This document shows, piece after piece, positions 2,739 to 44,482 of a DNA stretch of 64,000 nucleotides. How positions within the stretch are numbered: position 1 is the stretch's first letter; each line of letters opens with the position of its first letter. The stretch is taken from positions 186,001 through 250,000 of IMG/VR virus record IMGVR_UViG_3300037110_000087; one strand, 5' to 3'. A program made the translations under genes and the position numbers. The notes beneath the pieces are model-generated. The model worked only from the letters and a program-made list of their open reading frames with translations. It had not been told where the DNA came from and ran no database searches.

Positions 2739-2754
2739 GGGGCCTTTCGGCCCC
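2739..2754. terminator. GC-rich hairpin
   Basis: GGGGCC-TTTC-GGCCCC. Confidence 0.55.
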
Positions 2755-2785
2755 CAAAAAGTATATAATGGAGAAAGGGAGGAAC

Positions 2786-5712: not shown

Positions 5713-8241
5713 ATGGAAATTGTAGCTGTCTCTGGAAAATTGGCAAGGAAGATTCTGCTAGATGTGAAGGGACTTCTATCTGAGGTCCCTTCACATGTGT
5801 CTATAGACACTCTCGATTATCAAACTCTCTCACATAAGATCAGAGCATTTATCATCTCAGACATCTATGAATATATGGGCACAGTAAAAATCTCCAAGTC
5901 CAGCAAATTTCATATTGGACCGGGTGGTGGCAAGGGTGAGAGCTGGTGTCATTACCAACCAAAATCGGATACCTTTGAATTCTTGACCGATCTCAATTCA
6001 CAAGCAACCAAAGAGGAATTTCTTTCTACATTGTTCCACGAGCTTGTCCATCTTGAGCAGTCTGCTAGGACCGTGAAGACCAATGAAGAGAAGTTCAAAA
6101 ATTTGAAACCGGCTGCAAAGTGGTTTGATGTGGGCGCTTGGCCCCTGGGTATCGGAGATTCTGTTCTGCACAAGACCAATGATCCCTATCTGGAAGATCC
6201 CCATGAGATCGAAGCCTATGCGGTGGAGCTGGCCGGTCTGATTGAAGATAGATACGATAGATCACAGATCAAAGAGCTAATCAACAAAATTTCCACTGAC
6301 CCAGAGAATCTCGATGAGCTGATCTATAGACATTTTGATGATGTAGTTATCAAGTATATCAGGAAAGTGACCGGAAAGTCGAAACAAAGATTTCTGAAGA
6401 TTTTATACCAGTGCTTATCCGAGTCGCTATTCGAGAAGACAGGATCTTCAGAAAATCTTATGAGTTGGTTTGGCGACAGTAAGATCGTGGATGGGGAAGG
6501 GAAACCTCTGAAGCTATATCATGGCAGTCGCTATACTTTTGATGGCAATTCGTTTAAGAAAGGTAAATATGGATATATTTACCTTACTCCAGAATCCTCA
6601 TATGCAGACTCTTATACTGATGATACGCCAGCATATCCACGAGGAGGGGTTTTCCCTCTCTATGTTAAGGCTATAAAGCCACTTGATCTCAGACCACTTT
6701 CTGATACTTATATTCCGTTGGAGAAATTCTTGGAGTTCGTAAACAGCAGGGGTGTTGATACAACACAAACCAACGAAAATGAGTATCAGGCCCTAGACTA
6801 CTTAACATGGAAATCAAAGGAATGTAGTCGTCTTCCAGCATGGTCATGGGTCAAGACGGAGGAGTTCAGGAAGCGGGTGATCGAAGCGGGTTATGATGCT
6901 ATCTGGCAGGTAGAAGGACTTAAGTATGATACACTAGCAGTATTTAGTCCAAAGCAATTGAAATCGGCTCTTGGGAATAATGGTGAATACGCGGAAGACG
7001 AGAACATCATAGCATCCACAAAGATAGCCACTGGGATTAAGCCACCAATCTGGATCAACGAACTTTGGGAATATGTTCGTAGATATACATTCAGACAGAT
7101 CACTGACATCTCACCTAATGTATGGAATGCCAAGGGTGGATATTTTTCGATTCCAGTCTCGAATTTTCTAACGGAGAAGGGTTTTAAGAACTCTGGCATC
7201 AACTTTAAATGGTTTTCGAAAGAGAGAAACCCAGAAGCCAAACAATGTAGCGGACATGCCTGTCGTTATTCTATAGATGGTGCTCCCTCAGGCTATTTCA
7301 TGGTAGTTATTCCTGATGCGGAGATGAACAATATTATAGCGGGTGAAAAAAAATTAGACCCCTATATATGGAACCGTGATGGTAAAGAAATAGTGACGGA
7401 GCGGAAAAGAGATCTTACCTATAGGGAACTGGATAAATATAAGACTGTCTTCGTTCATGAGTTTACGCATATGATGGACGAATCGGTTCATCACAAGAAC
7501 AAAAGATTACGATATCCCACTGATGCTGACTGGGAGAAGGACTGGGAGAAGTCTAATTTTCAACACAAGAAATTTCCCACAGAATGGAGAGCGCATCTCG
7601 GTGAGATCCGACAAGAACTAATTGATTCTAAAGCAGTAGAGGAATGGAATCAGGAATACTATTCTACAGTGATGGAGTTCCTGGACGAGCAATCCCCCAC
7701 TTGGAATAGAATCAAGAAATATCTACCTGCAAAAGGAAGACGTTACATCCTGCAAGCGATTGGTCATGATCTCATTGAAGCTCTTCCTGAAAAAGATAAA
7801 CCTTACAGGCGAAGAACTCTTGAAGAGAACCAACGTCAACGTGACGAATGGAAACGGAGAGAGGAAGCACCTTATCCACCTCGGTTTGAGAGTATCGAGA
7901 GAGTGAGAGCTTTATACGCGAAGGCTAAGCAGGATTTAGGGGAGCGCTCTCCAGAAGCCAAATTCCTTGAGGAGCGGCTTAAAACCTGGGATAAGGATCA
8001 GGAAGTTGAGAGTAGGGGTGAGTATGGCCCCATGCATATAGACAACTTCTCTGAATCCTACCTGGGGAATGAATGGAAGGATCTCGATCCAATGATTAAA
8101 GACTGGCTGAAGAAGGCTAACAAATCTCTCTTCCGAACACCCGCACCATCCGCGTATCCAGGGCATAAGTATGTTTGGAGAGATGAATCTCCTTGGATAC
8201 TTGGATTCGAAGATCCTATCGGAGAACCCTCTAAAGTTTAA
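5713..8241 (+). CDS. Polyvalent protein: zincin metallopeptidase - ADP-ribosyltransferase-like (ART-PolyVal type) - second zincin
   Basis: HELVH...DPHEIEA; WFGDSKIVDGEGKPLKLYHGS...YLT...GYDAI...AVFSPKQLKSA; HEFTH...PTEWRA. Confidence 0.75.
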   Translation: MEIVAVSGKLARKILLDVKGLLSEVPSHVSIDTLDYQTLSHKIRAFIISDIYEYMGTVKISKSSKFHIGPGGGKGESWCHYQPKSDTFEFLTDLNSQATKEEFLSTLFHELVHLEQSARTVKTNEEKFKNLKPAAKWFDVGAWPLGIGDSVLHKTNDPYLEDPHEIEAYAVELAGLIEDRYDRSQIKELINKISTDPENLDELIYRHFDDVVIKYIRKVTGKSKQRFLKILYQCLSESLFEKTGSSENLMSWFGDSKIVDGEGKPLKLYHGSRYTFDGNSFKKGKYGYIYLTPESSYADSYTDDTPAYPRGGVFPLYVKAIKPLDLRPLSDTYIPLEKFLEFVNSRGVDTTQTNENEYQALDYLTWKSKECSRLPAWSWVKTEEFRKRVIEAGYDAIWQVEGLKYDTLAVFSPKQLKSALGNNGEYAEDENIIASTKIATGIKPPIWINELWEYVRRYTFRQITDISPNVWNAKGGYFSIPVSNFLTEKGFKNSGINFKWFSKERNPEAKQCSGHACRYSIDGAPSGYFMVVIPDAEMNNIIAGEKKLDPYIWNRDGKEIVTERKRDLTYRELDKYKTVFVHEFTHMMDESVHHKNKRLRYPTDADWEKDWEKSNFQHKKFPTEWRAHLGEIRQELIDSKAVEEWNQEYYSTVMEFLDEQSPTWNRIKKYLPAKGRRYILQAIGHDLIEALPEKDKPYRRRTLEENQRQRDEWKRREEAPYPPRFESIERVRALYAKAKQDLGERSPEAKFLEERLKTWDKDQEVESRGEYGPMHIDNFSESYLGNEWKDLDPMIKDWLKKANKSLFRTPAPSAYPGHKYVWRDESPWILGFEDPIGEPSKV

Positions 8242-29996: not shown

Positions 29997-30019
29997 ATCC
30001 CACTCATTAAGGGACTAAA

Positions 30020-30050
30020 CAGATGCCGGGAGGTTTGCTCCCGGCATCTG
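30020..30050 (-). terminator. terminator after ligA
   Basis: CAGATGCCGGGAG / CTCCCGGCATCTG stem. Confidence 0.65.
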
Positions 30051-30057
30051 GTGTGGA

Positions 30058-32121
30058 CTACATCCCCAACATCTTGAAGAAGTCGGCTTCGGACACGATC
30101 TTGATCCCTGCGGCCTTGGCTTTCTTCATCTTGCCGCTGGTGGAGTCCATTTCGGCGGTGACCAGCATGGTGACGCTGGGCCGGAAGTCTTCTTCGATCC
30201 TGGCACCCTGCTTGGCCGCGAGATCCTGCATCCGCTTGCGGGTGAAACGCTCACCCTTGTCGTCGCAGCGTTCGATCTTGCCGGTGAACAGGAGGGTATC
30301 TCCCATCAGCACCATTTCGCCCTTGACCTGACTGCGTGGATCACCGTTACCGAAACCGGGCATGGGAGCCTCCTTGAGTTGGTTGAAGAGTGGATGGAAA
30401 TCGACGGTGGGAGGGAGTTCTTTTTCGTTGATCTTGATGGCTTCGAGCAGCGCTTCGATCATGGGCCGCGCCCTCTGGATGCCCTTCACGATAGTGTAGG
30501 CTTTCTTATCCTTGTAGCCGCCGACACTCAGCAGATAGGTAGCAGTCAGGCTGAACCAGCCATCGATGGTGTCGATGCCGGTCTTCTCCATGATGATCTC
30601 GCATTCCCTGCGGCCTAGAAACTTGATGCAGACCGAACCCATGAGATCGTTGAGATCGCAGTTCCTTGATTTGTTGATCTCACCGATGATACGATGAGCG
30701 TTCGCGGTTCCCAGCACCCCATTGCCCACCCTCACACGCTCCAGGGTGCTGTAGGTCAACTTGTAGAGATCCTGGGGCTGGGTCACAGTGCCGTTGTCGT
30801 AGAGAGCCTGGAGCAGGACGTCACCGATGAACAGGATGTTGCGCTTGGTGATCCACTGTTTGACCACCTGTATGCCCCGACCTTCGCAGGACTCGTTGAT
30901 GCATTTGGTCGAAGCACCATCCACGACCAGTGGTTCGTCACAGAAGGGACAGGTGCTGGGAGCCACGATCAGTTCACCGATGCGCTCTTTGGTCTGGTGG
31001 TCGTAGCGGGGGAAGACTTCCTTGATGTGGGGAATCACACCACCGGCCCGTTCGATGACCACCTTGTCACCGATACAGACACCACCCAGTTCCATGAGGT
31101 AGGGGAAGTTGTTGGCCAGGACGGACTTGCAGGTCACACCCTGGATGTCCACCGGATTGTATTTGAGGGTGGGGATGATGGCCCCAGTGCTGCCGATGGT
31201 GAGTTCCACACCAATGATGGTGGATTCGGCGGTGTCATTGGCGAACTTGATGGCCTTCTGCCCCTTCGGGCAGTTGTCGCTGCTCATGCCCAGGGTCTTC
31301 TGCGCTTGGACGCTGTTCATCTTGACCACGGTGCCATCGGCTTCGTAGTCGAACTCGTCCCGGTTGGTGACGAAGTAGGTCTTGAAGGCATTCTGGATGC
31401 CAACAGCGTCCTGGCAGAAGATGGACTCGACAGGCCGGAATCCCAGGTTCCGCATGAACTCGATGCGCATCTGCTCCGTGGGATAGACCCAGCGGCCATC
31501 CAGGGGGTCCAGCGGCTCATATTCGAAGACGATGAGATCCAGGTGACGGGCGAGGTTGGTTCCCTTCTGGTCGCGGACGACCGCCACCGAATTGCGGCAG
31601 GTCTTGTGACCCAGCGGCTGGAAGAACTCCGTATACTTGGTCTTGCTTAGCAGCAGTTCACCCCTCACATCGCCAGTGAAGGGAACTGGAAGCCGCTTAG
31701 GGATCGAGGGGATGTTCACGGCATTGAATAGCACGGACTCCCCGACCTCACCATCACCCCTGGTAGCCGCTTCGGTCAAGCAGCCATCGGTGTATTGGAG
31801 GACGAGGGTCATGCCATCGAGCTTCCATTCCTGGAGGTAGCCATCGGTGGGCCGGATGTTGTCCTTGACCCAGTTCTTGATCTCGTCAGGCGACTTGAGT
31901 TTGTCTTGGCTCCCGGCGACGATCCGGTGGGTGACCTTCCTGGCATCCACCGGGACCTTGGCCCCGACCTTCCTGGAATAGGGGTGATTGGGTTCCAGGG
32001 CGCAGAACCGCTCTGCCATCCGGTCATATTCGTTGTCGGACAGGATGGGCTTGACCCGCACATAGTAGTCGTGGTCTGCCTGGAGCAGCTTCGGGAGGAG
32101 GGCTTCGGCCTCTTTGTTCAT
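30058..32121 (-). CDS. ligA: NAD-dependent DNA ligase
   Basis: YY...SDNEYD, KLDG, TRGDG, VRGE, DGTVVK, RAGGVIP, CPFC Zn finger, HhH, C-terminal BRCT. Confidence 0.95.
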   Translation of the reverse strand: MNKEAEALLPKLLQADHDYYVRVKPILSDNEYDRMAERFCALEPNHPYSRKVGAKVPVDARKVTHRIVAGSQDKLKSPDEIKNWVKDNIRPTDGYLQEWKLDGMTLVLQYTDGCLTEAATRGDGEVGESVLFNAVNIPSIPKRLPVPFTGDVRGELLLSKTKYTEFFQPLGHKTCRNSVAVVRDQKGTNLARHLDLIVFEYEPLDPLDGRWVYPTEQMRIEFMRNLGFRPVESIFCQDAVGIQNAFKTYFVTNRDEFDYEADGTVVKMNSVQAQKTLGMSSDNCPKGQKAIKFANDTAESTIIGVELTIGSTGAIIPTLKYNPVDIQGVTCKSVLANNFPYLMELGGVCIGDKVVIERAGGVIPHIKEVFPRYDHQTKERIGELIVAPSTCPFCDEPLVVDGASTKCINESCEGRGIQVVKQWITKRNILFIGDVLLQALYDNGTVTQPQDLYKLTYSTLERVRVGNGVLGTANAHRIIGEINKSRNCDLNDLMGSVCIKFLGRRECEIIMEKTGIDTIDGWFSLTATYLLSVGGYKDKKAYTIVKGIQRARPMIEALLEAIKINEKELPPTVDFHPLFNQLKEAPMPGFGNGDPRSQVKGEMVLMGDTLLFTGKIERCDDKGERFTRKRMQDLAAKQGARIEEDFRPSVTMLVTAEMDSTSGKMKKAKAAGIKIVSEADFFKMLGM

Positions 32122-32918: not shown

Positions 32919-34502
32919 TTATTTTCCTTGATTCTTCCTTAGTGTAACAGGATCAGCCGTATAATAATCAATAAATTCCAAACCAAATGAATTACAATAG
33001 GTTGTAGCCATTTCGGTACTGGCGAATCGCATCATTGGTTCAAGCTCACGCCATCTACTCCGTCTAATAGTCATGGCATAATCAAATCCATTATTAGCAA
33101 AGAATCGGGCCGGAACCGCCCGGCAGGTGATCCATTTTACTTCAGTGAGTGCTTCTTCTACCTCTGTCTCTGGCTTCTTTAGGCCAAGTGCAGCTAGAAT
33201 CATCCCTTCAAATTCTGGATCAGCTTTGGGCCTACCATAACTTACCCCTTCTTGAGTGACCTCAGCATCTTCATCAGCCAATGGCCACCAATTAGATATA
33301 ACTTGAATAACGCTTACATGAGTAAACTGATGTTTGAGGAGCAATTCTCTGAAGATCTCCCGCCAGTTGGCTGGATGACCTAGGGATACTATTCTTGAGA
33401 AACGATTAGCAGGTAATTCAGATAAATTTTCAACTGTGAAATTATCACCGAGATATTCATCCACGACTCTCTTCGCATATCCAGGCTCTTGCTCTTTCAA
33501 CATCTCCACTTGCCAGATATCAAGATCGCCACCATGGACATGAGGGAAGGCTTCCCTATAGGGCAAAGTCGAAGTCAAGATCGCCATCAGATATAATTCT
33601 TCTTCGCCCAACTGCTGCAGCCAGCTGGAAAGTGACTTACCCGCGAATTCGGTGATTTCATAGAACATCATCGCCATGACACCGAGTTTGTCAGTATAAG
33701 CGAAATATCTATCCAATTTGACTGTTGACGGTGTAGCGAACTCGTCCAGGAAAAAATTAATATGTTCCTTGTTTAGTAGTTCCTCCATGATTTCTTTTAG
33801 ACCTTCAGCAGAATGCCCACTACCTGAAGAAGACATCATTACGCCTATTGGGGGTAATAACTGTCCAAGGCGATGATCATCACACCATCTAGTCAGGGTA
33901 TCCGCTCCTCCAAAGAATTCCTCATCTGTCACATCTTTCAATTGGCCTGTTGGCGCATGAAATTGAGCATAATTCCTACCATTCTTGCGGATCACATAAA
34001 GAGGACCCTGTTCCAGAAGCCCCGGAGCGTGTTCCTCTTGGGTCGTACACCAATTAGTCCCTGAGCCTAAGGCTCTCGCTGCTGGGAAAGTTGTGGCCTT
34101 ATAGACCGTCCAAATACCTTCCTCAAGCACGATCTCAGATCCTTCTGCCACATCCTGTTTAATTTTGTCTCGGACTTCCTGTTTCTTACTTGGGCCAAGC
34201 AGACCTTGATATCCCTGGAGCAAAGTGAATAGTTTCCCAGGTGTGTAGTCAAGAATATTCTTGGAATCAATGAATAAGGGCTTGTTCTTGACTGTATCAA
34301 AGTCCTTCAGTTGCTGCTTGATTTTATCGAAGTCAGACTCCAATATACGCCCAGCGGCGAATTCTCTGCACAACCACGCGATGTAGCTTGATTGCGGATT
34401 GTCAAGAGCAATGAGCTTGTCCATAGTCTCTAGATCAAGGTCGAACTTCTTCATAAAGAAATCCTTCTTGGGTTGGTTAATGGCGAAATACAGAGTTATC
34501 AT
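32919..34502 (-). CDS. GTxWCT-domain paralogue 4 (leader MITLYFA)
   Basis: shared N-terminal module YxxWLC...FDxxKxKPxFxDSKNI...GSGTNWCT. Confidence 0.8.
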   Translation of the reverse strand: MITLYFAINQPKKDFFMKKFDLDLETMDKLIALDNPQSSYIAWLCREFAAGRILESDFDKIKQQLKDFDTVKNKPLFIDSKNILDYTPGKLFTLLQGYQGLLGPSKKQEVRDKIKQDVAEGSEIVLEEGIWTVYKATTFPAARALGSGTNWCTTQEEHAPGLLEQGPLYVIRKNGRNYAQFHAPTGQLKDVTDEEFFGGADTLTRWCDDHRLGQLLPPIGVMMSSSGSGHSAEGLKEIMEELLNKEHINFFLDEFATPSTVKLDRYFAYTDKLGVMAMMFYEITEFAGKSLSSWLQQLGEEELYLMAILTSTLPYREAFPHVHGGDLDIWQVEMLKEQEPGYAKRVVDEYLGDNFTVENLSELPANRFSRIVSLGHPANWREIFRELLLKHQFTHVSVIQVISNWWPLADEDAEVTQEGVSYGRPKADPEFEGMILAALGLKKPETEVEEALTEVKWITCRAVPARFFANNGFDYAMTIRRSRWRELEPMMRFASTEMATTYCNSFGLEFIDYYTADPVTLRKNQGK

Positions 34503-34509
34503 GTCGTTC

Positions 34510-35877
34510 CTAATTATAGTCGCACCAATCAGTCATTACCTGGGCTTTGATGGGATCAACCACCCCTAGAGTTCGTAACTGTTCGTTTCTGAGCCACTCC
34601 GGATTGGATTCCATCGCTTCCATTTCTTCCAGGCTCCAACCTTCCTTGGGATCGACCTTGGTTGACTTTGGAGGAATATCGTCCTCTCTGACTACTATGC
34701 CCAGATATTCTAAGCAAGTTGCAAAATCCTCGTTGACGGATTCTATCTCGTCTGCCTTGGCAACCCAATCATTAACATAATTAACAGCGAACTTGGTAAG
34801 AGGATCGACCCTTTCCGGATTGGCCTCCATATCTACTTCCCGTTCCTCCGGAATACGAACGTAATATTTTACTGCTGTCATAGGGTCGGAGTGAATGAAG
34901 TTCAGAAGTCGAGTCAGCTGGCGTCCCGGTTTTCCTACAAAGACGGCCATTAATTCAAGGGCTGCTTCACTATCATGAGTTTCCTCGATTCTGTCTATGA
35001 GTTTATCAAAGATTTTCTTATTGAATTCCAGTCTGCCAAAAGTGGATTCATCTTGTTCCCAATCCAAATATTCCTGGTAGTAATCGAGGATCATCAAAGG
35101 ATTTTTTGGCAGAAGGCGTTGTACTCGCTCCATGAAGACCCATTGATCATCGTCGGAGTCGAAATAATCCACCTGCCCGATGTCGATAGGGAGCTTTTCT
35201 ATCCGCTTGAGGATTTTCAGATAGCCCAAACCCGAAGAATCTGGAGCAATGAACATGAATTTGATATCACCTGCTGACTCGTCGGCTGGGTTCATATATT
35301 GCATTTCTTTGCCCAAATGAAACTGGTATATTGGCTTCCCTTCGTATGCCTCTGCATCGGGGCCACCATACGCGATATAAACGGGTCCCTGCGCCAAGTA
35401 TTCTGTGGCGAAAGACCGCTGAGTGGTGCACCAGTGGGTTCCAGATCCCATGGTTACAACATCCTCGGGTCTGATGCATTTATACCAAGTGATTTCTCTA
35501 TCTTGATAAATAATTGTGGCTTGAGTCTTTTTCTCTCTCTTCTGCTGTTCGGTTGGTTTGCTGATCTCTGACTCTTTGTAAGTATCCAGGACTTTGTAGA
35601 GATCGTTAATTTTCTTGTATGAATCGATGTTTTTAGAGTCTTTGAACAACGGTTTATTTTTGATTTTATCAAATTTGGCGAGACTGTCCCTGATGATCTT
35701 GGTATCCTGAGGCAATCGTATGAAATCGACCTGACGACAAAGATAATCAAGGTAGGAACTATTAGGAGTGGAATCACATGCATCGAGAAGATCCACTAGC
35801 TTGGGATCCAGTTGGTATTTATTAATAACGAATTCCTTCTTATCCGGATTGGCAACGGCGAAATGTAATGTGATCAT
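34510..35877 (-). CDS. GTxWCT-domain paralogue 3 (leader MITLHFA)
   Basis: DSTPNSSYLDYLC, RLPQDT, TEQQKREKK, GSGTHWCT. Confidence 0.8.
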   Translation of the reverse strand: MITLHFAVANPDKKEFVINKYQLDPKLVDLLDACDSTPNSSYLDYLCRQVDFIRLPQDTKIIRDSLAKFDKIKNKPLFKDSKNIDSYKKINDLYKVLDTYKESEISKPTEQQKREKKTQATIIYQDREITWYKCIRPEDVVTMGSGTHWCTTQRSFATEYLAQGPVYIAYGGPDAEAYEGKPIYQFHLGKEMQYMNPADESAGDIKFMFIAPDSSGLGYLKILKRIEKLPIDIGQVDYFDSDDDQWVFMERVQRLLPKNPLMILDYYQEYLDWEQDESTFGRLEFNKKIFDKLIDRIEETHDSEAALELMAVFVGKPGRQLTRLLNFIHSDPMTAVKYYVRIPEEREVDMEANPERVDPLTKFAVNYVNDWVAKADEIESVNEDFATCLEYLGIVVREDDIPPKSTKVDPKEGWSLEEMEAMESNPEWLRNEQLRTLGVVDPIKAQVMTDWCDYN

Positions 35878-37163
35878 TATTGTCCCATCCTTCTGAAAGC
35901 TGATGAAGCCATCTCAGGATTCAGGATAAGCCCATCTGGAGCCTCTCCAAAATCCATGAAACAGCAGCAGCAATAAAAATCATCGTCATAAGGCCAATCA
36001 TGCACGGCCATGCTCTCGTATTTCTTTGTGTACTCGTTAATTATCCCAGCAGCTGCTTCTCGGAGACGTTTAATGGATTCTTTTGGTATATCGTCTTCGT
36101 CAGACTCGCTCCGTATGTAATATCTAATAGAGGCCATGTCGTCAGATTTTATCAGAGCGTAGAGTCTGGTATACTGAGCGTCATCGAATTCCATGTGTGG
36201 ACCATGGAAAGTCAGCAGTTCCACGGCTTCATCTGTATTGTTGGTTTCCTCGATTTTACGGAGTAGCATTTCTGGCATACCATCAAGAAGCGTGTCAGGT
36301 ATACTGTCAAGAAAATCTTCTAATTCTTCAATCCCGCCAAGCTGAACACATTCCCAGAAGACCGAAATCATCAAGGGATTCTGAGGTAGTAGATTATAAA
36401 TCCCCTCCCATTGTTCAACCGTGGGATCAAGGGATTCACCCTGTTTATAATAGGTTCCATCAGAAGGAAGGAGCATTGATAAATTCTCTGCCTTCATAAG
36501 CAGGCCAACTGGCTGCCTGAATGAATGAACTAAATCGGCCATCATCAACCTGATACCACGGGCTAGTGGAACATCTTCTGCATTCATGATCTGCAGATAT
36601 TTGCCCAAATGCAACTGGATCGTTGGCTTACCGGCTTTATTTAGATAGCAAATGTAAATAGGATTCTCTTTGAGATATTGATTGGCGACCTTCTTGTTTG
36701 GGACGGTACACCATTTTGTCCCAGATCCCATGACAGCAGCTTGTTCTGGTGTCTCGATCTTGTACCAAGTCATGATCGAATCTTTATAAACAACCTGAGC
36801 ACCGCACTTCATCTCTCTTTTCTGCTGTTCCGTTGAATCGGCCACTCCAGTTTCTTCGTAGGATTTGAGTGTCTTGTAGAGGTCCCCCAATTTCTTGTAG
36901 TGATAAATATCCTTGGAATCCTTGAACTTCGGTTTTTTCTTGTAAGAATCAAAGAGGGCGAGGGCTTCAAGAATGATCCCGGTGTCCTGGGGCAGACGCA
37001 TGTTCTTCTGCGAATACTGACCGCATAACCAATCTACGAAATCTTTTTTCGGAGTCGGGTCACAAGCATCAATCAGATGCAGATCCCTCTCCGTCAAACT
37101 ATACTTCCCTTTCAGGAATTCTGTTTTCTCCGGTTTGATCACAGCGAAGTGGAGGGTGATCAT
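35877..37163 (-). CDS. GTxWCT-domain paralogue 2 (leader MITLHFA)
   Basis: DPTPKKDFVDWLC, RLPQDT, TEQQKREMK, GSGTKWCT. Confidence 0.8.
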   Translation of the reverse strand: MITLHFAVIKPEKTEFLKGKYSLTERDLHLIDACDPTPKKDFVDWLCGQYSQKNMRLPQDTGIILEALALFDSYKKKPKFKDSKDIYHYKKLGDLYKTLKSYEETGVADSTEQQKREMKCGAQVVYKDSIMTWYKIETPEQAAVMGSGTKWCTVPNKKVANQYLKENPIYICYLNKAGKPTIQLHLGKYLQIMNAEDVPLARGIRLMMADLVHSFRQPVGLLMKAENLSMLLPSDGTYYKQGESLDPTVEQWEGIYNLLPQNPLMISVFWECVQLGGIEELEDFLDSIPDTLLDGMPEMLLRKIEETNNTDEAVELLTFHGPHMEFDDAQYTRLYALIKSDDMASIRYYIRSESDEDDIPKESIKRLREAAAGIINEYTKKYESMAVHDWPYDDDFYCCCCFMDFGEAPDGLILNPEMASSAFRRMGQ

Positions 37164-39313: not shown

Positions 39314-40333
39314 CTAGTTGATCAGAACAGTGACAATCAAACTGTCGAACAGGTGCATCACCTGCTTGGCCTGGGCATCAGTCAATTTCGGACTGAAGAT
39401 CGTGTCGGTCATGTGCTTGATGATGGCTTGCTTGATCGGTGAGGGGTCCACGATCTCTGAATAAGAAGAGGGGGCAGGCTTGGGTGCGGGTGCCGGTTTT
39501 GGTGCCGCATGAACGGGTGCCGCAGGGACAGCCTTGACTGGAGGAGCAGGTGCCTCGGGCAACATCGTTCCTGCTAAAATCTCCACTGGGGGAGCGGCCT
39601 TGACCGGAGCAGGGGCAGGAATAGCGGCCTTGGCCGGAGCAGGAAGCACCGGAGCGGGGGCATTAGGCAACTTGTGACCATTGCCGTTACCATTGCCCTT
39701 GTTGTCCGCTCTCTTTTCCTTGTTTGCCTTGCCAGTGAGATTGCCGGTCACACCAGCCGCCCTACGGATCAGTTCTTGATCGGAAGCGACTGGAATGGAT
39801 TCGTCGATCGGCAATTTGATGGCCTGGAAGAAATTCGTCCGTTCCGAGATAGAAAATTTCCTCCGTTCCCATTCAGCGGGGCTGAGGATATTGCTCTTCG
39901 CTCCCATTGCTTTGGACAGTTTCTCTTGGGAAAGCCCCGAAGCGATTCGATAATCCCTGAGTTTATCGCCCCATTTGGCTGTTTCGATTGAAGTCATATC
40001 GACCACCTTTCGTTGATGTGGAATGATTTGATTTCCCAATTCCGATCTTTTCATCGCCGGACCAAGGCTGTGTTGTTTTCCATCTGCTGATTCGTTGGGG
40101 ATTCCCCTAACTATCTCAGCCAACTCAGTCTCACTGAAACCCCGCTTCTTGAGAAATCCAAGGATCTCCTTAGCATTCTCCCCAGCGTATTCTTGAGTGA
40201 CATTGACACGAAATTTGTTGATGAAAGTCTTGGTCGTGAGAAATAACGGAATGGAGGGTTTGACCTTCTGGTATCGAAGTGGATGATCCAGGGCCAAGAA
40301 CTGTTGCATTTTGACCATGACTCCCTCATACAT
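39314..40333 (-). CDS. XRE-family HTH protein with Pro/Ala-rich linker
   Basis: LRDYRIASGLSQEKLSKAMG; PAPA-rich segment. Confidence 0.65.
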   Translation of the reverse strand: MYEGVMVKMQQFLALDHPLRYQKVKPSIPLFLTTKTFINKFRVNVTQEYAGENAKEILGFLKKRGFSETELAEIVRGIPNESADGKQHSLGPAMKRSELGNQIIPHQRKVVDMTSIETAKWGDKLRDYRIASGLSQEKLSKAMGAKSNILSPAEWERRKFSISERTNFFQAIKLPIDESIPVASDQELIRRAAGVTGNLTGKANKEKRADNKGNGNGNGHKLPNAPAPVLPAPAKAAIPAPAPVKAAPPVEILAGTMLPEAPAPPVKAVPAAPVHAAPKPAPAPKPAPSSYSEIVDPSPIKQAIIKHMTDTIFSPKLTDAQAKQVMHLFDSLIVTVLIN

Positions 40334-41531: not shown

Positions 41532-42116
41532 ATGAAACCAAGATTCGCGGTGATCTCTTACCTTCCCTTTTTTAGAGGAAAGACTCCAGAAGATGCTGCT
41601 GAATACATGAACGTTCTCCCTCACGAAATTGGCTCTGCCAGCGGTTGCATCTGGACAATGGAAGAAAAGACTGGTGAGATTACAGCCATTCTCATCCTGA
41701 ACCTCGCTGAAGGATTACATGAGCATCTGCTGGAATGGAGTGAAGGACACGTGGAGGCCCGGTGGAGATTCGGGACTCATGACTTCCCTGATGGTCGATA
41801 TGGATTTCTCCTGGCTCCAAACATCGAACAGTCCATTCTCAGAGCCAAGATCAACATTAGTCTGCAGACCGGTCAGGTGATTCCAGACGATCACACCAGC
41901 GAAGTAGTATTCCGTCCGTTCAGTTTCATCAGCCTCTCGACCTCTCCGGTCTACAATCAAATCAAGGACAAGATCGGCAACAACCTCAAGATCTACTTCC
42001 TGGATCAGGCTGATTTCGATGATCATGGGTTCAGGATTGAAGATCTGTTCCTGATCGGCATAATCGAACGAACGGACATGTTTACCGGCTATCTGGAAGG
42101 TCTGATCGAACCTTAG
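41532..42116 (+). CDS. hypothetical protein
   Basis: ORF with purine-rich SD. Confidence 0.65.
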   Translation: MKPRFAVISYLPFFRGKTPEDAAEYMNVLPHEIGSASGCIWTMEEKTGEITAILILNLAEGLHEHLLEWSEGHVEARWRFGTHDFPDGRYGFLLAPNIEQSILRAKINISLQTGQVIPDDHTSEVVFRPFSFISLSTSPVYNQIKDKIGNNLKIYFLDQADFDDHGFRIEDLFLIGIIERTDMFTGYLEGLIEP

Positions 42117-42700
42117 CGCTTCGACTTTCCCTTGATGCCCATGCCTTTTAAGAAATCGTCGTCGCTCTGAATCAACTTCTTGTGGACCAGGAAGAGATAG
42201 GTGTAAAGCTGGTATGCCTCCATTCCCTGCCACTCCTCTGGAAGCGCGTCAAAACTATTGTCTGGAAGGGTTTCACCATAGGCGTTGCATTCTTCCTGAG
42301 TGAATCCAGCCGCTTCTCTTTTCTTGTCCCATTCCTCAGCTAACTCATCCAGTCCATAAGGATCGGGATATTGTTCAAAATAGTCATATTCATTAAGGAT
42401 TTGAACCTTATAAACTTTTTCAAGTTTAGCTACAATAGATGCAACCCATTCAGGATGAGACATGTTCTGTCCCCAAGCAGAAAAACTACTGACAGTTCCA
42501 TCACTACTGGGATAAGCCCAAAGCCAGCCTTTTCCATTTGTAAGGCCCAAAGCCCCGTTTTCCTCTTTGCCCACCCAAATTCTATGTTTCTCTCTGGTTA
42601 ACTGTCGGAGACTATCGAAGGGGATTTTTCCCTCGTCATCAGGAATCAACATATAGGCAGTGTCTGCCGTTTTAACGAATGCTTTAAGATATAGTTTCAT
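42113..42700 (-). CDS. hypothetical protein with Ala7 leader (MKLYLKAFVKTA)
   Basis: ATG 42700 after GGAG; overlaps end of upstream gene. Confidence 0.65.
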   Translation of the reverse strand: MKLYLKAFVKTADTAYMLIPDDEGKIPFDSLRQLTREKHRIWVGKEENGALGLTNGKGWLWAYPSSDGTVSSFSAWGQNMSHPEWVASIVAKLEKVYKVQILNEYDYFEQYPDPYGLDELAEEWDKKREAAGFTQEECNAYGETLPDNSFDALPEEWQGMEAYQLYTYLFLVHKKLIQSDDDFLKGMGIKGKSKR

Positions 42701-43952
42701 TCTTCTCTCCGACACATTCAGGCCCAAACTTCTCAATGGCTTTTTTGAAATATTCCACCAGGGCCGGTGGGGTGGAGTCTTCTTGATATGATTTGCGTCC
42801 ATCGCTTATCACAGCATTACCAAGAACCAGCATCACACCATTTCGGAACTTCTTTTGATAATACTCACGTTCCATAAGCTGGTCGAACGCCTTGCCATAG
42901 ACTGGATCAATATCGGTCAGCATTGATGAACATCCTGGGTTCTCGCATCCAAACAAATCAGAGTAATCAGAATAGCCGTTCACTATGGGTCTATGATATT
43001 CATGACAGAAGCCACAATAAGCATCGTTGCAGAAACCACTGGTGTACCTGGGTTCGGTGCCATTCAACCACTTGACGAAATGCCAGGGTGCACGGAGACT
43101 ATTGCACCAGACTTGGCTCATACCACAACGACATACATACAAGATGCCATAAGGGTACTGATGGTTCGTATTGATTACTGGCTTCTCATCAGGAAGAAGA
43201 TAGCCATAGCAATGAGCACATCTCATCGAGTGTTCGTTTTTGAATTTGGCTGTCCTTAGAGAGGCATTCCTGGTTTGCAGTGGATGGATTTGCTCAGGGT
43301 AGAAAGCAATCCAGGCTTCTTCTCTATACTGTGCGCTATCATACCCTTCCGCTTTCAGCCCTGCCACTAAATTAATAAAGTTGGGATCACTCGGGCTGAT
43401 GTGAAGAGCACGAAGGTCTGCTGGATTTTCCACGGAAAGTCTTGCGGAGATAATCCTACCATTCGGTTGATCTTTAATTAGATCCCTACAGTAATTAATA
43501 TCTCGGTGGAACATTGCTGGGGTTCGGAAAGTCTCTAATTCTTTTGTAGTGCCATGGTAGACCACATCTGGGACTTTGAGACTTGCATTAATTCTAATCT
43601 GTAAGGGATGAATTTCAGTGACCATCGCTCTTACATTATCAACGTGATTTCTGACTAATGACTCAATCCGGTGTAACCCATCCCAGACATAATAATCATC
43701 TTTGTACTTGACAATCTCAGGCAAGTTGTGAAACTTCGTTACCTGTCTAAGTAATTCTACTTTCTTATCCTCTATCTTAGATTGGACGCTCTTTAACTCT
43801 TGGATGGGCAGGGTCTTCTTATAGGTAACTGAAGAATGATTCTTCAACGCCTTGGCAATTTCTTCCTCCAAACGACGCGAAGCTACCGGGAGAGTTGTTT
43901 CCGTATCCCAGTAAGCTTTTCTTTTTACCCTAGCAATTAAATATAATATCAT
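42684..43952 (-). CDS. Polyvalent protein: ParB-like - ART-like - Cys-rich domain; Ala7 leader (MILYLIA)
   Basis: VWDGLHRI; VVYHGT...LKAEGYDSAQY..EAWIAFYPEQI; multiple CxxC; repeated junction IHPLQxR(I)NASL. Confidence 0.7.
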   Translation of the reverse strand: MILYLIARVKRKAYWDTETTLPVASRRLEEEIAKALKNHSSVTYKKTLPIQELKSVQSKIEDKKVELLRQVTKFHNLPEIVKYKDDYYVWDGLHRIESLVRNHVDNVRAMVTEIHPLQIRINASLKVPDVVYHGTTKELETFRTPAMFHRDINYCRDLIKDQPNGRIISARLSVENPADLRALHISPSDPNFINLVAGLKAEGYDSAQYREEAWIAFYPEQIHPLQTRNASLRTAKFKNEHSMRCAHCYGYLLPDEKPVINTNHQYPYGILYVCRCGMSQVWCNSLRAPWHFVKWLNGTEPRYTSGFCNDAYCGFCHEYHRPIVNGYSDYSDLFGCENPGCSSMLTDIDPVYGKAFDQLMEREYYQKKFRNGVMLVLGNAVISDGRKSYQEDSTPPALVEYFKKAIEKFGPECVGEKNETIS

Positions 43953-44430: not shown

Positions 44431-44447
44431 GGTTCCATTATAGCATT

Positions 44448-44467
44448 GGACCCCCTTTCGGGGGTCC
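44448..44467 (-). terminator. hairpin after nrdJ
   Basis: GGACCCCC-TTTC-GGGGGTCC. Confidence 0.6.
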
Positions 44468-44482
44468 CTTGTTTTTAGTCAG

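What the first reader, a model, noticed from the sequence alone, without database searches (positions are those of the whole stretch)
42684..43952. Three-domain polyprotein with the same linker at both junctions
Seen: ParB-like domain, then EIHPLQIRINASLK, ART-like domain, then QIHPLQTRNASLRTA, then a Cys-rich domain. A conserved IHPLQ-x-R-(I)-NASL at both borders, resembling the Ala-ending leader, points to a cleavage site or a recombination joint for module insertion. Both neighbouring genes also carry the leader.
Basis: partly seen in the sequence, partly recalled or inferred. Interest (0 to 1): 0.62.

Follow-up and report, generated by a model that had tools for sequence, protein, structure and literature searches.

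The report
Three fused phage effector cassettes
A 307-kb phage encodes one protein made of three enzyme-like modules that elsewhere occur as separate small genes, and the two look-alike joints between them appear to be internalised copies of the short N-terminal tag that about 30 genes of this phage carry; whether the joints are cut is untested.

Summary
Window 42684-43952 (-) is one 422-aa ORF with three modules: leader plus ParB/Srx-like (res 1-115), ART-PolyVal ADP-ribosyltransferase (127-222) and a Cys-rich module of unknown fold (236-417). The junctions carry EIHPLQIRINASLK and QIHPLQTRNASLRTA.

Each module has stand-alone homologues elsewhere, so the protein is a fusion. 'EI(H)' and 'QI' are the last residues of the upstream folds. 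The true joint is HPLQ-x-R-(x)-NASL-[KR].

The two copies differ at 8 of 10 shared codons, and no DNA repeat lies there. The similarity is therefore at peptide level, and a recent DNA recombination joint is not supported.

Scored against the genome-wide leader (MKLHLKAFVKKA, on about 30 genes including both neighbours), the two joints are the second and third best sites in the protein, after its own N-terminus. Joint 2 sits where solo C-module proteins have their leader-like N-terminal peptide.

Most likely this is a small polyvalent effector built from three leader-tagged cassettes, with internalised leaders as unstructured linkers. Cleavage is plausible: the phage has a ClpP-type head maturation protease, and close ART relatives sit beside prohead protease genes. 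It is untested, and the joint motif occurs nowhere else.

The parts
43914..43952 (-). N-terminal leader of P0001 (res 1-13, MILYLIARVKRKA), a diverged copy of the genome-wide leader
   Evidence: The leader PSSM scores it 14.3, the best site in the protein. The leader family is defined.
43608..43913 (-). ParB/Srx-like module (res 14-115), with DG-x-HR at res 91-95
   Evidence: Solo homologues are P0007 (E 1e-15), P0008 and P0009. In alignment A3, G92, H94 and R95 are invariant. A solo orthologue in L032 is 47% identical. Pfam and PDB hits are weak.
43575..43616 (-). Joint 1 as flagged (res 113-126, EIHPLQIRINASLK). EIH closes the ParB-like fold; PLQIRINASLK is the leader-like segment.
   Evidence: The gapped leader PSSM ranks it second in the protein (5.0, p per position 0.0014).
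43287..43574 (-). ART-PolyVal module (res 127-222), with H133 in VVYHGT and E212 in EAWIAF
   Evidence: BLASTP to P0002 and P0003. Alignment A6. PF18760 gives 21.6 bits, below the cut-off.
43248..43292 (-). Joint 2 as flagged (res 221-235, QIHPLQTRNASLRTA). QI closes the ART fold; HPLQTRNASLRTA is the leader-like segment.
   Evidence: It aligns with the N-terminal peptides of the solo C-module proteins P0005 and P0006. The gapped PSSM ranks it third. It is predicted as coil at pLDDT about 25.
42702..43247 (-). Cys-rich C-terminal module (res 236-417), fold unknown, probably metal-binding
   Evidence: Solo homologues are P0005 (47% identity, 195 aa) and P0006 (196 aa), plus a 209-aa ORF in L023. 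Nine Cys are invariant in P0001, P0005 and P0006, six of them also in the L023 homologue. No fold match was found.
42684..42701 (-). Five-residue tail (NETIS) plus stop, read from the leader codons of the next gene in another frame
   Evidence: Solo homologues end at ..GPECVGEK. The downstream ATG at 42700 overlaps this tail.
42113..42700 (-). Downstream leader-bearing gene (195 aa, MKLYLKAFVKTA), whose start overlaps the end of P0001
43972..44430 (-). Upstream leader-bearing gene (152 aa, MRLMLKATIEEP), a solo ParB-like paralogue
   Evidence: In alignment A3 it shares G-x-HR and the same C-terminal strand.

Best explanation
P0001 is a small 'polyvalent' phage effector protein. It arose by in-frame fusion of three gene cassettes that elsewhere exist as separate small genes: a ParB/Srx-like module, an ART-PolyVal ADP-ribosyltransferase and a Cys-rich module.

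In this phage lineage such cassettes each begin with a roughly 12-residue N-terminal leader (consensus MKLHLKA-[FT]-[VI]-KKA). The two look-alike joints are the leaders of cassettes 2 and 3, now internal. They have lost the Met and carry a one- or two-residue insertion: HPLQ-x-R-(x)-NASL-[KR].

Shown here: the joints lie outside the three folds, they are conserved as peptide rather than DNA, and each module occurs on its own elsewhere.

Inferred: the joints act as flexible spacers and may still be read by whatever machinery reads the N-terminal leader. The leading guess for that machinery is virion targeting and/or trimming by the ClpP-type head maturation protease, as with the capsid targeting sequence of T4 internal proteins. 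If so, the protein could be delivered whole or cut into three effectors.
For: 1. Every module has solo homologues.
- N module: P0007, P0008 and P0009 (87-134 aa), which end 2-7 residues after the last strand. An orthologue in the leader-sharing relative L032 is 47% identical, stops at ..ATVFDLDLALSAK, and is followed by a tRNA and then another leader gene.
- ART module: P0002 to P0004.
- C module: P0005, P0006 and the L023 ORF.

2. No homologue covers res 116-126. Res 224-235 are covered only by the N-terminal peptides of the solo C-module proteins.

3. Joint 2 is 13 residues long, the same length as the peptide that precedes the conserved KFK in solo P0005. It shares the core N/Q-[AS]-[SF]-[LI]-[RQ].

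4. With a leader PSSM that allows a 0-2 residue insertion, the three best sites in P0001 are the true N-terminus, joint 1 and joint 2, at p per position of 1e-4, 0.0014 and 0.0021.

5. The leader is real and acts at protein level.
- About 30 ORF starts carry it, with varied synonymous codons.
- It is attached to unrelated folds: four ART-PolyVal proteins, NUDIX, SET and ParB-like.
- It is shared by the distant relative L032, where HTH and sigma-70 region 4 proteins carry it.

6. The same genome holds a second fusion. The 402-aa ORF L007 has an intact internal leader, Met included.

7. The P0001 / downstream-gene junction (..GEK, then ATG in another frame) suggests that a single frameshift would fuse two cassettes.

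8. The same architecture occurs with a different peptide in another phage. P0004 repeats its own 22-aa N-terminal peptide between its ART module and the next domain.

9. AlphaFold2 models joint 2 as coil at pLDDT about 25, and the C module core starts at about res 243.

10. Context for virion delivery:
- P0002 and P0004 lie directly upstream of Peptidase_S78_2 prohead protease genes, and P0002 is also next to a Mu F-like gene.
- G000 encodes a ClpP-type head maturation protease.
- Several leader genes flank its head and tail genes.
- Polyvalent proteins combining ART and ParB domains are proposed to be injected and processed (PMC5512222).
Against: - The ungapped leader HMM does not pick up the joints. 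Their PSSM scores (5.0 and 3.9) are lower than those of 48 unrelated internal sites in the proteome. Leader-likeness therefore rests on position and rank, not on score.
- The self-similarity alone has p about 0.02.
- The two joints resemble each other more than either resembles the canonical leader. This calls for a shared origin (a different leader 'dialect', or a duplication) or a shared constraint, neither of which is shown.
- The alignment of joint 2 with solo N-termini is short and weak.
- The gene sits beside ribonucleotide reductase, not in the head module. A sigma-70-like -10 box directly upstream of the operon hints at early expression, which fits virion packaging poorly.
- Structure models of the N and ART modules and of joint 1 are too poor (pLDDT below 40) to say anything.
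Confidence: 0.62

Rival explanations
1. The joints are true proteolytic processing sites. The head maturation protease, or another protease that also trims the N-terminal leader, cuts at or near ..N-A|S-L.. and releases three separate effectors. This is compatible with the fusion origin, but it is a separate and stronger claim.
For: - The leader invariants L3, L5, A7 and a hydrophobic residue at position 9 alternate as in an extended protease substrate.
- Joint 1 keeps I-x-I-x-A-x-L in the same register.
- G000 has a ClpP-type head maturation protease (PF00574 at 102 bits; phrog_94 at E 1e-25).
- The closest ART relatives are encoded next to prohead proteases.
- Polyvalent proteins are proposed to be processed into units (PMC5512222).
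- T4 internal proteins share a capsid targeting sequence (PMC3012670).
- From my own knowledge: that sequence is removed by the prohead protease, and herpesvirus assemblin cuts [VLI]-x-A|S.
Against: - There are no cleavage data.
- The joint motif occurs nowhere else in the genome or in JGI metagenome contigs.
- Joint 2 lacks the hydrophobic residues at the two positions that are invariant Leu in the leader.
- No embedded MPTase, S77, S78, S21 or Prp peptidase was found.
- The specificity of ClpP-type prohead proteases is unknown.
- The genomic position and the promoter-like sequence suggest early rather than late expression.
Confidence: 0.3
2. The joints are a recombination scar. The ART module was inserted into a two-module ParB-Cys protein by recombination between repeated sequences, leaving the same joint on both sides.
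For: - A direct repeat flanks the middle module at peptide level.
- The leader is a repeated sequence at many gene starts that could, in principle, support cassette exchange.
- Hairpin-plus-promoter elements precede some leader genes. From my own knowledge, these recall the T4 promoter-early stem-loop cassettes.
Against: - Eight of the 10 shared residues use different codons, including TTA/CTG for Leu and AGT/TCT for Ser.
- None of the 17 direct-repeat families in the region falls on the joints.
- No ParB-Cys two-module relative was found in 5.8 billion proteins. The N-module search of 1.8 billion representatives found only short solo proteins of 87-134 aa.
- The only close relative of the N module is solo.
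Confidence: 0.08
3. The similarity is chance resemblance between two flexible linkers and has no shared origin or function.
For: The self-match reaches only p about 0.02. Part of the match (EI / QI) is explained by the unrelated ends of two folds. The motif is unique to this protein.
Against: - The match falls exactly at both module borders.
- The two joints are the two best internal leader-like sites among about 400 positions.
- An analogous repeat of an N-terminal peptide occurs in P0004.
Confidence: 0.12
4. The joint peptides are integral structural elements of the folds, for example shared terminal strands.
For: 'EIH' and 'QI' do belong to the upstream folds. AlphaFold2 drew a low-confidence helix over res 219-231 in the full-length model.
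Against: - Solo N-module proteins stop before PLQ...
- ART relatives have unrelated sequence both before the HGT strand and after Q-I.
- The domain-only model gives coil at pLDDT about 25.
Confidence: 0.04

Closest known systems
Polyvalent proteins of phages and conjugative elements (Iyer, Burroughs, Anand, de Souza, Aravind 2017; PMC5512222)
   Same: Several unrelated effector domains sit in one phage polypeptide. ART-PolyVal and ParB-type domains are among the hub domains of that class. Close ART relatives lie in head-morphogenesis modules.
   Different: - P0001 is very small: three modules in 422 aa.
- It has no MPTase or other embedded peptidase and no Mu F domain.
- The ParB-like module is not shown to belong to the DdrB-like family.
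- The modules are joined by copies of a genome-wide N-terminal tag, a feature I did not find when searching that paper for 'linker' (0 occurrences) or for processing-related terms.
Capsid targeting sequence (CTS) of T4 internal proteins IPI-III and related polymorphic internal proteins
   Same: A short conserved N-terminal peptide is the only thing shared by a diverse set of small anti-host proteins (PMC3012670). From my own knowledge, T4 also packages an ADP-ribosyltransferase (Alt).
   Different: - There is no sequence similarity to the T4 CTS.
- No T4-type prohead protease (S77) or gp23 capsid protein was found.
- Neither packaging nor cleavage is shown.
- Here the tag also occurs inside proteins.
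Prp (phage-related ribosomal protease) substrates: the L27 N-terminal extension and the phage 80alpha capsid and scaffold N-termini
   Same: An N-terminal M-(x)-K-L-x-L-..-KK peptide is removed from several proteins. The motif MLxx(D/N)LQ(F/L)F'A(S/H)KK (PMC9405229) looks superficially like MKLNLKAFVKQS.
   Different: The LQ-F-F|A core is absent. The residue at the would-be P1 position is variable in the leader. No Prp gene is present in the genome, and the host is unknown.
P0004, a metagenomic ART-PolyVal protein next to an S78 prohead protease
   Same: The architecture is the same: N-terminal peptide, ART module, a copy of the same peptide, then the next domain.
   Different: The repeated peptide is unrelated (ILK-x-FCPTGEGGGID-xx-CSP). 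The downstream domain and the phage are different.

Membership tests
ART-PolyVal (PF18760) | Significant match to the family model | tested here: inconclusive
   P0001 scores 21.6 bits, E 3.9e-4, below the 31.2-bit cut-off and over profile positions 6-66 only. The own-genome scan gives 15.8 bits.
ART-PolyVal (PF18760) | Clear homology to proteins that carry the domain | tested here: met
   BLASTP E 6e-36 (54% identity over 99 aa) to P0002 and E 6e-30 to P0003. P0004 is 37% identical. All three are annotated PF18760.
ART-PolyVal (PF18760) | Active-site pattern: H in strand 1, Y in strand 2, D in strand 5 (PMC5512222) | tested here: inconclusive
   H133 (YHGT) is present. The strand-2 position reads M-F (F148) in P0001, P0002 and P0003, where other copies have an F-F or Y-L pair. 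The strand-5 acid is E212 (EAW), not D. Catalytic competence is not established.
ParB/Srx superfamily | Match to ParB or sulfiredoxin models, and the conserved DG-x-HR (GxxR) motif | tested here: inconclusive
   ParBc_2 gives E 0.1. The profile of A3 finds ParB 4umk (E 0.14) and sulfiredoxin 6ky4 (E 0.16) as the top two PDB hits. Homologue P0008 has a weak ParB_N hit. G92, H94 and R95 are invariant. All scores are sub-threshold.
Polyvalent proteins (Iyer et al. 2017) | Two or more unrelated effector domains in one polypeptide of a phage or conjugative element | tested here: met
   There are three modules, each with solo homologues. G000 is an IMG/VR virus record of 307 kb with tail fibre and head protease genes.
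Polyvalent proteins (Iyer et al. 2017) | Delivery with the DNA and processing by an embedded peptidase (MPTase or assemblin-like) | not testable with these tools
   No peptidase domain is present in P0001. Packaging and injection need experiments.
T4-type capsid targeting sequence system | A conserved N-terminal peptide shared by otherwise unrelated small proteins | tested here: met
   About 30 ORF starts carry it, attached to ART, NUDIX, SET, ParB-like and unknown folds.
T4-type capsid targeting sequence system | Removal by the prohead protease and presence inside the capsid | not testable with these tools
   Only context is available: a ClpP-type head maturation protease in the genome. S77 and gp23 are absent.
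Prp cleavage substrates | Motif (D/N)LQ(F/L)F'A(S/H)KK and a Prp protease | tested here: not met
   The leader consensus lacks the LQ-F-F|A core (against PMC9405229). PF04327 has no match in the genome.

The most novel reading that the evidence does not exclude
The roughly 12-residue leader is a portable sorting-and-processing tag, for virion packaging or another compartment or partner, that works equally at an N-terminus and inside a chain. Cassettes could then fuse and split freely. P0001 would be a true polyprotein cut into a nuclease-like, an ADP-ribosylating and a metal-binding effector. Unrelated phages would use their own tag 'dialects' the same way: MKIYKIA in L023, ILKxFCPTGEGGGID in P0004 and AKFNPNH..GRF in L034.
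Probability: 0.22. Interest if true: 0.72.

Novelty: new variant of a known kind. Interest (0 to 1): 0.5.

Why it matters
Multi-domain 'polyvalent' phage effectors are known, but how their modules are assembled and separated is mostly inferred. Here one protein can be read as three tagged cassettes caught in the fused state, with solo versions of every module available for comparison. A relative holds the first module unfused, and a second fused protein in the same genome still has an intact internal tag. If the tag proves to be a targeting or cleavage signal, it would give a simple sequence rule for finding the delivered effectors of an uncultured group of huge phages. It would also give a handle for loading foreign proteins, as the T4 capsid targeting sequence did.

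Tried and rejected
- **Phage database.** tblastn of P0001 and blastn of neighbouring genes against the phage collection found nothing.
- **IMG/VR scans.** P0001 and a 564-aa neighbour gave no relatives. Two leader DNA patterns gave nothing or one chance hit, L022.
- **Paralogues.** phmmer of each module against the six-frame genome found none at E < 0.1.
- **Ungapped leader HMM.** It does not detect the joints.
- **Joint motif elsewhere.** It is unique in the genome. The JGI metagenome pattern scan returned three hits, all in tiny non-coding frames. Only the copy-2 spacing could be scanned. A first attempt was rejected for having too few specified bases and was corrected.
- **Protease and capsid families.** Prp, S77, S78, S21, gp23 and HK97-capsid families are absent. 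The major capsid protein was not identified.
- **Full-length structure.** The AlphaFold2 model was poor (pLDDT 48; joints and the N and ART modules below 40), so it cannot decide the status of joint 1.
- **Fold of the C module.** The VIA wide search (best Z 2.6) and the ESM Atlas gave nothing.
- **Prp idea.** I raised this from memory and rejected it after reading the motif.
- **Clamp-binding idea.** A beta-clamp-binding-motif reading of the leader (QLxLxF-like; my own knowledge) was considered but could not be tested.
- **Genetic code.** No alternative code was applied. The TGA at codon 2 of the L032 homologue was left as a stop.
Full report
**What is there**

Window 42684-43952 (minus strand) is a single 422-aa ORF, P0001. 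The window is bases 186001-250000 of a 307,124-bp IMG/VR virus record. CheckV estimates it 98% complete, and its GC content is 45%. The record has tail-fibre genes and a ClpP-type head maturation protease. It has no close relative in the phage databases.

EIHPLQIRINASLK is res 113-126 and QIHPLQTRNASLRTA is res 221-235.

**The three modules**

- **Middle module (ART-PolyVal).** It is 54% identical over 99 residues to P0002 and 38% identical to P0003, both annotated PF18760. It keeps the family landmarks: P-x-x-[VL]-[YF]-HGT, NP, G-[YF]-D, and E-A-W-[IV]-A-F-x-P-x-Q-I. P0001's own Pfam score is below the cut-off. The strand-2 Tyr appears to be replaced, so activity is not assured.
- **N-terminal module (ParB/Srx-like).** The evidence is several weak but concordant hits.
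  - Pfam ParBc_2 gives E 0.1.
  - ParB and sulfiredoxin are the two best PDB matches of the family profile.
  - One homologue has a weak ParB_N hit.
  - DG-x-HR is invariant.
- **C-terminal module (Cys-rich).** Nine Cys are invariant in P0001, P0005 and P0006, and six of them also in the L023 homologue. It has no Pfam family, no solved relative and no Atlas neighbour.

**Every module exists on its own elsewhere**

- **N module.** An exhaustive search of 1.8 billion representatives with res 1-126 found three small proteins of 87-134 aa. Each ends 2-7 residues after the last strand..A-x-V-x-E-[IL]-(H). One ends ..AYVYEIHNQI. The upstream neighbour in the window is a fourth, paralogous example.
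- **A solo orthologue in a relative.** The contig that carries P0007 (L032, GC 44.5%) belongs to a phage with the same leader on at least four other genes. There the orthologue is 47% identical to P0001 res 5-114. It stops at ..ATVFDLDLALSAK and is followed by a tRNA-Leu gene and then another leader gene.
- **C module.** It occurs as stand-alone proteins of 195, 196 and 209 aa. These end at ..GPECVGEK, which corresponds to P0001 res 417.
- **The last five residues.** NETIS is simply the leader of the next gene read in another frame. That gene's ATG (window 42700) overlaps the end of P0001.

**What the 'linker' really is**

Homologue boundaries show that 'EI(H)' closes the ParB-like fold and 'QI' closes the ART fold. 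The repeated unit proper is HPLQ-x-R-(x)-NASL-[KR]. No homologue of the flanking folds covers it.

At DNA level the copies are not alike. Of the ten residues they share, eight use different codons, including TTA/CTG for Leu and AGT/TCT for Ser. None of the 17 direct-repeat families in the region falls on them. The likeness is therefore a peptide-level property, and a recent DNA recombination joint can be set aside.

As a bare self-similarity the match is only marginal. The gapped score of 43 was reached in 8 of 400 shuffles, and the ungapped score of 34 in 52 of 300.

**Relation to the leader**

About 30 ORFs of the genome start with M-[KR]-L-x-L-x-A-x-[VIL]-K-K-A. L3, L5 and A7 were fixed by the pattern used to collect these ORFs, and a hydrophobic residue at position 9 is nearly invariant. 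Synonymous codons vary freely, so selection acts on the peptide.

The leader precedes unrelated folds:
- ART-PolyVal in four proteins, out of seven ART-PolyVal matches in the genome;
- NUDIX;
- SET, where the leader is an 11-residue add-on before the domain;
- ParB-like modules.

Both neighbours of P0001 have it.

An ungapped leader model does not find the joints. Their scores are modest compared with random internal sites across the proteome. When a 0-2 residue insertion is allowed before the invariant Ala, the three best sites in P0001 are its own N-terminus, joint 1 (PLQIRINASLKVP) and joint 2 (PLQTRNASLRTAK). Their per-position p values are 1e-4, 0.0014 and 0.0021. By my estimate, the chance that the two best internal sites fall within ±2 residues of the two module borders is about 3e-4. 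The two joints are not independent, because they resemble each other.

Independently, joint 2 occupies the place and has the length (13 residues before the conserved KFK) of the N-terminal peptide of the solo C-module protein P0005, MRLPNQAFIQLTE. P0006 has ..KRLPLNSFIRLVE there. Both peptides are themselves leader-like.

A further relative, L023, has a solo C module and neighbours that all start M-[KR]-I-x-K-[IL]-A. This is another dialect of the tag.

**Supporting parallels**

- The same genome holds a second fused protein, L007 (402 aa). It carries a complete internal leader, Met and ribosome-binding site included.
- In an unrelated phage, P0004 repeats its own 22-residue N-terminal peptide between its ART domain and the next domain.
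- In L034, two adjacent head-module genes share an AKFNPNH..G[KR]F peptide ahead of their effector domains.

A short lineage-specific peptide in front of each effector module, whether at an N-terminus or internal, thus seems to be a recurring design.

**How it most likely works**

- **Shown:** the protein is modular, each module occurs solo elsewhere, the joints lie outside the folds, they are conserved as peptide, and they are leader-like by rank.
- **Modelled only, from a shallow alignment:** joint 2 is coil.
- **Inferred:** P0001 arose by in-frame fusion of three leader-tagged cassettes. The abutting, frame-shifted junction with the next gene suggests that one indel would be enough for such a fusion.
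- **Further inference about function:** the joints may be flexible tethers, or they may still be recognised by whatever recognises the leader.

The leading candidate for the leader's role is virion targeting and/or trimming by the head maturation protease. The basis is analogy with the T4 capsid targeting sequence (PMC3012670) and with the proposal that polyvalent proteins are injected and processed (PMC5512222). Three context observations fit this:
- The two closest ART relatives sit directly upstream of prohead protease genes.
- P0003 contains a Mu F-type motif (my reading).
- Leader genes flank the head and tail genes of G000.

Four observations argue against cleavage or packaging:
- P0001 lies next to ribonucleotide reductase, in an operon preceded by a hairpin and a consensus -10 box only 7 nt from the first ATG. 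This looks like early expression from a near-leaderless transcript.
- The full joint motif occurs nowhere else.
- Joint 2 lacks the two hydrophobic positions that are invariant in the leader.
- No cleavage evidence exists.

I put the fusion / internalised-leader reading at about 0.6, actual cleavage at about 0.3, and a DNA recombination scar below 0.1.

**Comparison with known systems**

The protein fits the definition of a polyvalent protein by architecture. It lacks the embedded peptidase and Mu F domains typical of that class.

The leader system works like the T4 internal-protein capsid targeting sequence in one tested respect: a shared N-terminal peptide on diverse small proteins. It is not homologous to it, and its defining functional features could not be tested.

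The resemblance to Prp substrates, which I raised from memory, fails the motif test. No Prp gene is present.

**Limits**

- Structure predictions were poor because the alignments are very shallow.
- The major capsid protein was not identified.
- The host is unknown.
- Only one spacing of the joint motif could be scanned in the metagenome collection.

Noticed in passing
whole genome G000; in the window at 2786 (+), 25983 (-), 42700 (-), 43952 (-), 44430 (-) and 47968 (-): About 30 ORFs start with the same 12-residue leader, M-[KR]-L-x-L-x-A-x-[VIL]-K-K-A, encoded with varied codons. It is attached to ART-PolyVal, NUDIX, SET, ParB-like and unknown folds. The distant relative L032 shares it, on HTH_3 and sigma-70 region 4 proteins. 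This is probably the larger story behind the present finding.
   Followed up: partly
G000 118035-119243 (+) = L007, internal site at 118491: A 402-aa ORF starts with the leader. At residue 153 it has a second complete leader (MELHLVATIQKK) preceded by an AAGGAAGGA ribosome-binding site. It is either a two-cassette fusion or a lost stop codon with possible internal initiation.
   Followed up: partly
G000 98403-98811 (-) (L017 and a 44-aa ORF); also 99301-99534 (-): An ART-PolyVal gene with a leader appears split. Profile positions 1-70 lie in a 98-aa ORF and positions 101-134 in a separate 44-aa frame just downstream. It was described only, not joined. Another leader-variant ART lies next to it.
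   Followed up: no
window 5713-8241 (+): An 842-aa ORF without the leader carries the best ART-PolyVal match in the genome (62.6 bits, at window 6490-6987). It is a larger polyvalent-type protein, and the rest of it was not analysed.
   Followed up: no
window 44431-44470 (-), window ~2740-2785 (+), G000 100401-100420 (-): GC-rich hairpins are followed by a consensus or extended -10 box that ends 7-20 nt before the ATG of leader genes. This implies very short or absent 5' UTRs. The arrangement recalls the promoter-early stem-loop cassettes of T4-type phages (my own knowledge).
   Followed up: partly
L032 2943-2984 and the whole locus: The solo ParB-like orthologue in the relative reads ATG-TGA-LILRAQVRKA, a stop at leader position 2, where Arg (AGA) or Lys is expected. 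It may be a nonsense mutation, an assembly error or recoding; no other code was applied. The 9.3-kb locus also holds 12 tRNA genes, none with a TCA anticodon.
   Followed up: partly
window 32919-37163 (-), G000 88509-90653 (-) and 158500-160737 (+): Five large ORFs (428-745 aa), three of them in tandem, look like paralogues from their shared N-termini (MITLHFAV.. / M[TS]FRFSA..). Those N-termini loosely follow the leader pattern. The three in the window have no PHROG hit; the other two were not scanned.
   Followed up: no
G000 168465-170867 (L029 8465-10867): An HNH endonuclease gene is followed by the ClpP-type head maturation protease. Next comes a 402-aa protein whose N-terminus (MGKLRLAFKTVVK) is leader-like with one residue missing. 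It is a candidate scaffold or capsid substrate.
   Followed up: partly
L038 (P0004) and L034 (P0002 and the upstream gene): Other phages place their own short peptides ahead of effector modules encoded next to S78 prohead proteases. P0004 has ILKxFCPTGEGGGIDxxCSP twice. Two adjacent genes in L034 each have AKFNPNH..G[KR]F.
   Followed up: partly
window 39314-40333 (-) and window 30001-32000: A 339-aa ORF has a long Ala/Pro-rich low-complexity tail and a weak hit to a transcriptional regulator family. Separately, a 2-kb stretch has 57.7% GC against a genome mean of 45%.
   Followed up: no
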